A stretch of 63,985 bases of DNA, filler included, from Sluysia triapertura (lineage: Eukaryota), in assembly GCA_046118255.1 (NCBI GenBank). It is 5 parts of 5 records of this genome, joined end to end, with 100 filler letters (N's around TTAATTAATTAA, not from the genome) between each part and the next. Parts side by side here need not be neighbours in the genome. Positions count along the whole stretch, not along the records: positions 12,536 to 28,588 come from JBJNIA010211810.1; 4 more parts are not named here. One strand, written 5' to 3'. This document shows, one piece after another, positions 26,783 through 27,287 of this stretch. The first letter of the stretch is position 1. Each line of letters starts with the position of its first letter. The notes below the pieces were generated by a model. It ran no database searches and had not been told where the DNA came from. It saw only the letters and a list, made by a program, of their open reading frames with translations. A program made the position numbers and the translations under genes.

Positions 26783-27287
26783 TTTAATGAAAATAGCACA
26801 AAATGTCAAAAAAGCAAAATTACCATTAAAAAGTATTGAAGGAGTTATATTAGGAATGTAATTTTATTAATATTAAAATTTATACAATTTAAGTTACTTA
26901 ACAAATCCAATTTTAAATGTAGAACGTTTTGTTATAACGTTTCAATCTCATCAATTCAGACATATGGTTTTAGGGTTATTTAATCATGAAACACGAACTT
27001 TTGGAACAATAGGTATTAGTAGACGATCGAATTTGATGTACAAACCATTATTTTATGAGGTTAGTGTGATATTTAAAAATATCGTTTTTATAATGTTTAT
27101 TAGTTACTTGTAAATAAAAACAGTATATTAATTATTAAAATTAATTATTGATTATTATTATTTTCAGACATTGTATGATTTGATTCAAGAATTTAATGAA
27201 TCATATTCAATAAATGGTAATAGTTTAGTAGAAGTTCATTTTAGTGATCCAATTAGTAGACAAAAAAATGGTACTTTTAATTGGGCA
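26783..27287 (+). CDS. VASH: Vasohibin-like (tubulin carboxypeptidase family) internal exons 26783-26857, 26894-27059, 27168-27287; catalytic Cys replaced by Ser
   Basis: Spliced at GT-AG sites: LMKIAQNVKKAKLPLKSIEGVILGI|YLTNPILNVERFVITFQSHQFRHMVLGLFNHETRTFGTIGISRRSNLMYKPLFYE|TLYDLIQEFNESY. VASH1 reads LMDLAKEMTKEALPIKCLEAVILGIYLTN...ERF...FRHIVLG...GALGMSRREDLMYKP...TLSELV. The 3' end is uncertain (read-through stop at 27306-27308). Confidence 0.88.

What the first reader, a model, noticed from the sequence alone, without database searches (positions are those of the whole stretch)
26783..27287. Vasohibin homologue with catalytic Cys->Ser but an otherwise intact active site
Seen: three open exons with canonical splice sites encode LPLK-S-IEGVILG (AGT at 26832-26834), FRH (CAT at 26961) and GISRRSNLMYKP. 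Known: VASH1/2 detyrosinate alpha-tubulin using the Cys in LPIKC and the His in FRH, and Cys mutants are inactive. Inference: this is either a natural pseudo-enzyme (a possible tyrosinated-tubulin binder or dominant-negative) or a Ser-nucleophile variant. It could also be a young pseudogene, since the 5' exons look decayed. An in-frame ATG at 26787 could start a truncated product. The loop before FRH is 4 aa shorter than in VASH1. The ORF track misses this gene because the exons are short.
Basis: partly seen in the sequence, partly recalled or inferred. Interest (0 to 1): 0.75.

Follow-up and report, generated by a model that had tools for sequence, protein, structure and literature searches.

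The report
Vasohibin paralogue with serine at nucleophile
A diverged extra copy of the tubulin-trimming enzyme vasohibin in a very AT-rich, short-intron animal genome really does carry serine in place of the catalytic cysteine; it looks more like a retained inactive copy than plain decay, but expression and its first exons are unproven.

Summary
On the + strand there are four (not three) open, GT-AG-bounded vasohibin exons: 26353-26409, 26783-26857, 26894-27059 and 27168-27287. The nucleophile codon is AGT (26832-26834). The His, the Ser-Arg-Arg motif and the substrate-contact Tyr and Lys are kept. A contig from another public run shows the same AGT.

The same genome has two Cys-bearing (TGT) paralogues and several intronless decayed copies. 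All 87 outside relatives that cover this column have Cys.

This copy (W) is an old duplicate, 53% identical to its nearest paralogue. Pairwise dN/dS is 0.32. Its excess change is confined to the Cys-helix exon and the last exon, while the His/Ser-Arg-Arg exon is as constrained as in the active-looking paralogue (Fisher p=0.001). Of its 5 departures from family-conserved columns, 4 sit within the 8 conserved columns at the nucleophile (p=0.005). Simulation suggests a neutral copy would gain a stop within about 0.1 substitutions per site.

Best reading (0.45): a retained, catalytically dead vasohibin. Main rival (0.33): a recently dead gene.

Unresolved: no RNA data, no orthologue, and no N-terminal exons within 13.8 kb upstream. 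A high-copy repeat lies 230 bases before the first exon found.

The parts
26353..26409 (+). Exon a. It starts in phase 2 after the acceptor ttttag and encodes the YNYTGTQFF motif (Tyr134 equivalent; Lys146 and Arg148 equivalents kept). Donor is gtaata at 26410.
   Evidence: family HMM 24.7 bits; VASH2/VASH1 chains, E 0.008-0.04
26410..26782 (+). Intron of 373 nt, GT..AG. The same intron is about 40 nt in paralogues A and B.
26783..26857 (+). Exon b, the nucleophile helix. It reads LPLKSIEG where the family has LPIKCLEA. The internal Met codon is at 26787.
26832..26834 (+). AGT (Ser) at the position of catalytic Cys169 of VASH1. The codon is TGT in paralogues A and B and in the retro-pseudogene, so a single T-to-A change separates them.
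26858..26893 (+). 36-nt intron (gtaatt..aag), at the same position and of the same size as in paralogue B.
26894..27059 (+). Exon c: YLTN..ERF, FRH (His204 equivalent, CAT at 26961), GISRR (Ser221/Arg222 equivalents) and LMYKP (Leu226 equivalent). It has a 4-codon in-frame deletion before FRH.
   Evidence: VASH1, E 2e-7; 65 bits
27060..27167 (+). 108-nt intron (gttagt..ttcag).
27168..27287 (+). Exon d, a diverged C-terminal core segment that ends in ..NW-A. After it comes either a donor (gttagt at 27288) or read-through to TGA at 27306-27308. The 3' end is not determined.
   Evidence: E 4e-7 to paralogue B exon d; 20.7 bits
25678..26123 (.). High-copy dispersed repeat (more than 1,300 candidate copies) ending 230 nt upstream of exon a. 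It is not part of the gene, but it bears on whether the 5' part is intact.
   Evidence: (depth in the thousands)

Best explanation
The locus is an intron-bearing, old and diverged paralogue (W) of the vasohibin tubulin-tyrosine carboxypeptidase family. A single T-to-A change has turned its nucleophile Cys into Ser. The rest of the catalytic and substrate-binding apparatus is kept: the Tyr134, Lys168, His204, Ser221, Arg222 and Leu226 equivalents. Most likely the protein no longer detyrosinates tubulin, because the same change (C169S) kills human VASH1. Selection appears to retain it as a pseudo-enzyme that still folds and still offers the tail-binding groove, for example as a binder or competitor for tyrosinated alpha-tubulin tails. 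Shown here: the sequence, the splice structure, the residue pattern and the uneven constraint. Inferred: loss of activity, retention by selection after the Cys loss, and the binding role.
For: Pfam match of 61 bits. Four open exons with six canonical splice sites, with intron positions shared with the paralogues. AGT is confirmed in a contig of a second run. The best PDB match of exon b is the engineered C169S VASH1, 6j8o. C169S, C169A and H204A abolish VASH1 activity (PMC6937246). Cys is invariant in all 87 relatives that cover the column, and W departs from only 5 of 36 family-conserved columns. Four of those 5 lie in the 8 conserved columns around the nucleophile (p=0.005). NG86 dN/dS between W and B is 0.32 overall: about 0.2 in exons c and d, 0.96 in exon b. 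At sites where A and B agree, W changed 3 of 28 in exon c and 2 of 10 in exon a, against 8 of 16 in exon b and 9 of 18 in exon d (Fisher p about 0.001). The B lineage is even across exons. Both indels are in frame. In simulation, the frame stays open with under 5% probability after 0.10 neutral substitutions per site. A real retro-pseudogene of B, at 10.6% nucleotide divergence, already carries stops. The genome holds three intact N-terminal exon sets with phase-matching GA|GT donors and three intron-bearing cores.
Against: No RNA run exists, so expression is unknown. No orthologue with Ser was found anywhere, so the age of the Cys-to-Ser change is unknown; it needs only one mutation. The N-terminal third (Pfam positions 1-73) is absent from the 13.8 kb upstream, although the same HMM finds it in the paralogues. 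A high-copy repeat sits 230 nt upstream of exon a. W evolves about twice as fast as B at the protein level (Tajima 22 vs 10, p=0.03). W has also lost a 97%-conserved His in exon d. The family has several dead copies in this genome.
Confidence: 0.45

Rival explanations
1. W is a recently dead gene. It was a functional, diverged, Cys-bearing paralogue for most of its history and is now a unitary pseudogene. It was inactivated by the Cys-to-Ser change, by loss or disruption of its 5' exons (the repeat insertion upstream), or by both. Too little time has passed for stops to appear in exons a-d.
For: No N-terminal exons in 13.8 kb upstream, although they are detectable in the paralogues. A repeat ends at 26123, 230 nt before exon a. 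The lesion is a single nucleotide change. The protein rate is faster than in B, and a 97%-conserved His is lost. No orthologue and no RNA evidence. Other family members in this genome are decayed.
Against: The exons are open, all splice sites are canonical and the indels are in frame, which bounds any neutral phase to under about 0.1 substitutions per site. Exon c is as constrained as in B. Three further substitutions at 89-100% conserved positions flank the Ser, while the other conserved columns are nearly untouched. That pattern suggests the active-site helix was released from constraint well before the rest. Paralogue B also lacks N-terminal exons within 2.7 kb upstream, and the count of three N-terminal sets to three cores fits a long intron rather than a truncation.
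Confidence: 0.33
2. W is an active hydrolase that uses Ser as its nucleophile with the retained His. The flanking changes (Ile to Leu, Leu to Ile, Ala to Gly) and the 4-residue shorter loop would have re-tuned the site, possibly for another substrate.
For: His204, Ser221, Arg222, Leu226, Tyr134 and Lys168 equivalents are all kept. The substitutions clustered around the nucleophile are all conservative, and dN/dS in exon b is about 1, which could reflect adaptation.
Against: C169S abolishes activity in human VASH1-SVBP (PMC6937246). None of the 87 relatives uses Ser. The triad lacks an acidic third member that would help activate a Ser hydroxyl (general enzymology; inference).
Confidence: 0.1
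3. The Ser codon is an assembly or sequencing error, or the locus is a mis-joined artefact.
For: The assembly is very fragmented (263,945 contigs) and the contig contains N gaps.
Against: A contig of run X1, which differs from the window at two other places, reads the same AGT and is collinear over 26099-27600. No second near-identical copy exists in the assembly.
Confidence: 0.03

Closest known systems
Human VASH1 / VASH2 (tubulinyl-Tyr carboxypeptidases, Pfam PF14822), including the engineered C169S mutant (PDB 6j8o)
   Same: Same domain. About 50% identity over the His/Ser-Arg-Arg exon. The Tyr134, Lys168, His204, Ser221, Arg222 and Leu226 equivalents are present. The nucleophile helix reads like the laboratory C169S mutant.
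   Different: The Ser is natural, not engineered. The loop before the His is 4 residues shorter. The last core exon is diverged enough not to hit VASH1 on its own. The N-terminal SVBP-binding part and the C-terminal tail were not found.
Cys-bearing paralogues A (C206421 + C3507) and B (C169847 + C210299) of the same genome
   Same: Same exon-intron layout, including the 36-nt intron after the nucleophile helix. W groups with B (53% identity).
   Different: A and B have TGT (Cys) and depart from 2 and 0 of the 36 conserved columns; W departs from 5. W's a|b intron is 373 nt where theirs is about 40.
Flatworm vasohibins already described (Schistosoma mansoni SmVASL, PMC2194728; Echinococcus granulosus vasohibin 1, UniRef A0A068WPM3)
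   Same: Vasohibin-domain genes of invertebrates. SmVASL also has an N-terminal coding piece about 2 kb upstream and variable C-terminal ends. The Echinococcus protein is among the hits.
   Different: The Echinococcus protein keeps the catalytic Cys (it is not among the proteins listed without the Cys motif). SmVASL's catalytic residue was not examined here. No Ser variant is reported in the papers searched.
Pseudo-enzymes in general (for example iRhoms, pseudokinases, inactive protease homologues)
   Same: A paralogue of an active enzyme that lacks the nucleophile but keeps the fold and binding residues, with constraint shifted away from the catalytic site.
   Different: Neither expression nor any function is shown here, and no conserved orthologues are known.

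Membership tests
Vasohibin family (Pfam PF14822) | Significant match to the family profile | tested here: met
   61 bits against a cut-off of 24 for positions 93-178, plus position 74-94 for exon a. My own family HMM matches all four exons, covering positions 95-239.
Vasohibin family, as an active tubulin carboxypeptidase | Nucleophile Cys (Cys169 of VASH1) | tested here: not met
   AGT = Ser at 26832-26834. Cys is present in 87 of 87 relatives.
Vasohibin family, as an active tubulin carboxypeptidase | Catalytic His (His204) and the third triad member (Ser221, with the Leu226 backbone) | tested here: met
   FRH, GISRR and LMYKP align to VASH1. The triad is as described in PMC4866520 and PMC6937246.
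Vasohibin family, as an active tubulin carboxypeptidase | Substrate and active-site network residues Tyr134, Lys168, Arg222, and the basic patch Lys145/Lys146/Arg148 | tested here: met
   Tyr, Lys168 and Arg222 equivalents are present. Lys146 and Arg148 equivalents are present. The Lys145 equivalent is Glu, a position that also varies in paralogues A and B.
Vasohibin family | N-terminal helical region that binds SVBP (Pfam positions 1-73) | tested here: inconclusive
   Not found in 13.8 kb upstream, which includes N gaps. Two orphan intact N-terminal exon sets lie on other contigs.
Vasohibin-SVBP system | An SVBP partner gene in the genome | tested here: inconclusive
   The only PF15674 match above cut-off is a vertebrate-like exon on a 778-base contig of GC 0.35, probably foreign. 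The other hit is low-complexity sequence.
Vasohibin family, as an active tubulin carboxypeptidase | Detyrosinating activity | not testable with these tools
   Needs a biochemical assay.
Pseudo-enzyme (retained inactive homologue) | Purifying selection acting on the copy that lacks the catalytic residue | tested here: inconclusive
   dN/dS is 0.32 and exons a and c are strongly constrained, but the branch cannot be split into before and after the Cys loss. No orthologues are known.
Pseudo-enzyme (retained inactive homologue) | Expression | not testable with these tools
   No RNA run holds the locus.
Plain pseudogene | Stops, frameshifts, lost splice sites, or loss of introns | tested here: not met
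   None in exons a-d, and the introns are retained. By contrast, the intronless copies C9719 and C29206 carry stops.

The most novel reading that the evidence does not exclude
This is a naturally catalytically dead vasohibin kept by selection in a probably parasitic flatworm. It would act as a reader of, or competitor for, tyrosinated alpha-tubulin tails and so restrain detyrosination by its active paralogues. Alternatively it has been put to a non-enzymatic role. It would be the first pseudo-enzyme of the vasohibin family.
Probability: 0.3. Interest if true: 0.7.

Novelty: new variant of a known kind. Interest (0 to 1): 0.42.

Why it matters
Vasohibins are the main enzymes that remove the C-terminal tyrosine of alpha-tubulin, and C169S is the standard dead mutant used to trap substrate. 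A natural copy with the same change and an otherwise kept binding groove would be a ready-made substrate trap, and a candidate regulator of the tubulin tyrosination cycle. No pseudo-vasohibin turned up in the papers searched. If it is only a dying gene, it is ordinary: one more decayed member of a family that has several in this genome.

Tried and rejected
1. Exon split by the repeat. Weak matches to the paralogue-A exon that precedes exon a flank the repeat, at 25669-25692 and 26125-26166. I dropped the idea. Other copies of the repeat reach to about 25678, so the left match lies inside the repeat. Neither match is significant.

2. Using the retro-pseudogene C9719 to learn which N-terminal exons belong to paralogue B. 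Its homology to B starts only at exon b, so it is 5'-truncated and says nothing on this point.

3. SVBP. The only good match is vertebrate-like. The second hit is low-complexity sequence.

4. Downstream C-terminal exon. I found no conserved piece among the three paralogues' downstream DNA and no HMM hit.

5. Searches for close relatives or further copies of the locus gave nothing. The word search with exon c found no candidates. The exact-protein look-up of the exon c ORF found no record.

I redid it from coordinates.

8. No structure prediction and no search with the spliced protein. All searches were done exon by exon.

9. Contigs C68639 and C104722 look vertebrate (GC 0.35-0.37; VASH1-like and SVBP-like exons that are not identical to the human sequences as I recall them). 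I took them for foreign, probably host, DNA and did not search them further.

Full report
**What is there**

Only places 12536-28588 of the window are real sequence (contig C211810, GC about 0.25). On the + strand I read four short exons bounded by canonical GT..AG introns:

- exon a, 26353-26409
- exon b, 26783-26857
- exon c, 26894-27059
- exon d, 27168-27287

Translations are and the DNA. It put the start of the His exon too far downstream and missed exon a. The b|c intron is only 36 nt (26858-26893), so the YLTN..ERF stretch belongs to exon c.

Exon a begins in phase 2 and has no ATG of its own, so coding exons further upstream are required. After exon d there is either a donor (gttagt at 27288, the same hexamer as the exon c donor) or read-through to TGA at 27306-27308. 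Paralogues A and B have gtaatt at the same place.

**Is it vasohibin, and is the Ser real**

A whole-genome six-frame scan with Pfam PF14822 gives 61 bits (E 2.4e-14, cut-off 24) for this locus.

- Exon c matches human VASH1 chains at E 2e-7, with FRH on His204 and GISRR on Ser221/Arg222.
- Exon a matches VASH2 and VASH1 at E about 0.01.
- The best PDB match of exon b is 6j8o, the engineered VASH1 C169S, because the window reads LPLKS where VASH1 has LPIKC.

The codon is AGT at 26832-26834. It is TGT in both Cys-bearing paralogues and in a retro-pseudogene, so one T-to-A change is enough.

The only public run that holds the locus (X1; kept as contigs; kind not on record) has a 1,966-base contig over 26099-27600. 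It differs from the window at 26152 and by a 6-base deletion at 26637, but not at 26832. No second near-identical copy exists in the assembly.

**Family in this genome**

The assembly (619 Mb, 263,945 contigs) holds the following:

- Paralogue A: C206421 for the N-terminal exons and exons a-b. The exon c/d pieces on C3507 are assigned to A only by elimination and by their higher similarity to outside vasohibins, not by any link.
- Paralogue B: C169847 for exons a-c and C210299 for exon d. The two contigs are tied together by the intronless copy C29206, which joins them at 92-93% identity.
- This copy, W.
- Intronless decayed copies on C9719 and C29206, with stops, and a fragment on C202656.
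- Two orphan N-terminal exon sets, on C16063 and C82145.

A and B both read LPIKC.

Two contigs of GC 0.35-0.37 carry vertebrate-type VASH1 and SVBP exons (C68639, C104722). I take them for foreign, probably host, DNA and left them alone.

Among the named outside relatives is Echinococcus granulosus vasohibin 1, and a Schistosoma vasohibin is described in PMC2194728. Together with the 36-nt introns and the AT-richness, this suggests a parasitic flatworm. That is my inference and was not tested.

**How unusual is Ser**

I ran a profile of the exon c pieces against 1.84 billion representative proteins. It gave 555 hits at E up to 0.001, and 150 were returned. Aligned to a family HMM, 87 sequences cover the nucleophile column and all have Cys.

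There are 36 columns conserved at 85% or more that W covers. W departs at 5 of them, paralogue A at 2 and paralogue B at 0. Four of W's five departures lie in the 8 conserved columns around the nucleophile: Ile to Leu, Cys to Ser, Leu to Ile and Ala to Gly. The hypergeometric p is 0.005. The fifth is a 97%-conserved His in exon d.

The equivalents of Tyr134, Lys168, His204, Ser221, Arg222 and Leu226 are all present. According to PMC6937246, C169S, C169A and H204A abolish VASH1-SVBP activity, and these residues form the active-site network.

**Dead gene or retained copy**

W is an old duplicate. It is 53% identical to B and 46% to A over the core, and it groups with B.

Codon counts were made exon by exon and then summed. 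They give dN/dS of 0.32 for W against B, with dS about 1.2. By exon the values are 0.32 (a), 0.96 (b), 0.21 (c) and 0.20 (d).

With A as outgroup, W has 22 unique residue changes and B has 10 (Tajima p=0.03). The excess is not spread evenly. At sites where A and B agree, W changed:

| Exon | Sites changed in W |
|---|---|
| a | 2 of 10 |
| b | 8 of 16 |
| c | 3 of 28 |
| d | 9 of 18 |

Fisher's test for exons a+c against b+d gives p=0.0009. The B lineage is homogeneous (p=1).

In a simulation with the genome's base composition, exons a-d stay free of stops with 21% probability after 0.05 neutral substitutions per site and under 5% after 0.10. The retro-pseudogene of B, at 10.6% nucleotide divergence, already has stops. 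Both indels between W and B are multiples of three.

So any neutral phase has been short. That is the pattern expected of a copy that lost catalysis and kept its fold and groove. It does not date the Cys-to-Ser change, which could still be recent.

**The weak points**

- No RNA run is available, so expression is unknown.
- No orthologue or close relative of W was found.
- The N-terminal third of the domain is absent from the 13.8 kb upstream, although the same HMM finds it in the paralogues at 24 to 41 bits. The upstream stretch includes two N gaps and a weak Rap-GAP-like ORF pair near 13929-14503.
- A dispersed repeat with more than 1,300 candidate copies ends at 26123, 230 nt before exon a.

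Against reading this as a truncation:

- B also has no N-terminal exon within 2.7 kb upstream.
- The genome has exactly three N-terminal exon sets for three intron-bearing cores.
- All three N-terminal sets end in GA|GT, the phase that exon a needs.
- The Schistosoma gene has its N-terminal piece about 2 kb upstream.

No worm SVBP was recognised, which is inconclusive for so short a protein.

**Verdict**

- Retained, catalytically dead vasohibin paralogue: 0.45.
- Recently dead gene: 0.33.
- Ser-nucleophile enzyme: 0.10.
- Artefact: 0.03.
- The remainder is left open.

The finding is a new variant of a known kind and of moderate interest. It becomes notable only if expression and fixation of the Ser are shown.

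All searches were run exon by exon by reference.

Noticed in passing
window 25678-26123; also L002 (C3507) about 590-1090: A dispersed repeat of about 450 bases, with more than 1,300 candidate copies in the assembly and read depth in the thousands. Copies share a sharp right end and have variable left ends, as a 5'-truncating retroelement or SINE would. One copy also lies next to the exons assigned to paralogue A.
   Followed up: partly
L004 (C68639) and L017 (C104722): Short contigs of GC 0.35-0.37, against 0.20-0.28 elsewhere, carry vertebrate-type VASH1 and SVBP exons. This is probably host or other foreign DNA in the assembly. Not searched further.
   Followed up: no
L003 (C9719) 1509-1738; L015 (C29206) 1084-1239; L016 (C202656) about 2001-2180: Intronless, stop-bearing copies of paralogue B, i.e. 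processed pseudogenes. C29206 joins exon c to exon d and so shows that contigs C169847 and C210299 belong to one gene. C9719 is 5'-truncated at exon b.
   Followed up: partly
L008 (C16063) and L013 (C82145): Two intact vasohibin N-terminal exon sets lie on contigs that carry no core exons. Each ends in a phase-2 GA|GT donor. One of them may be the missing 5' part of the window's gene.
   Followed up: partly
window 13929-14270 and 14309-14503 (+): Two neighbouring ORFs that resemble each other. The first has a weak match to the Rap/ran-GAP domain (E 0.06, below cut-off). They may be exons of another gene upstream.
   Followed up: partly
window 15311-15709: An Asn/Ile-rich low-complexity stretch (AAT-type repeats), open on both strands.
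   Followed up: no
L002 (C3507), exon c assigned to paralogue A: This exon c reads FNH where the family has FRH. The His is kept and the preceding Arg is lost.
   Followed up: no
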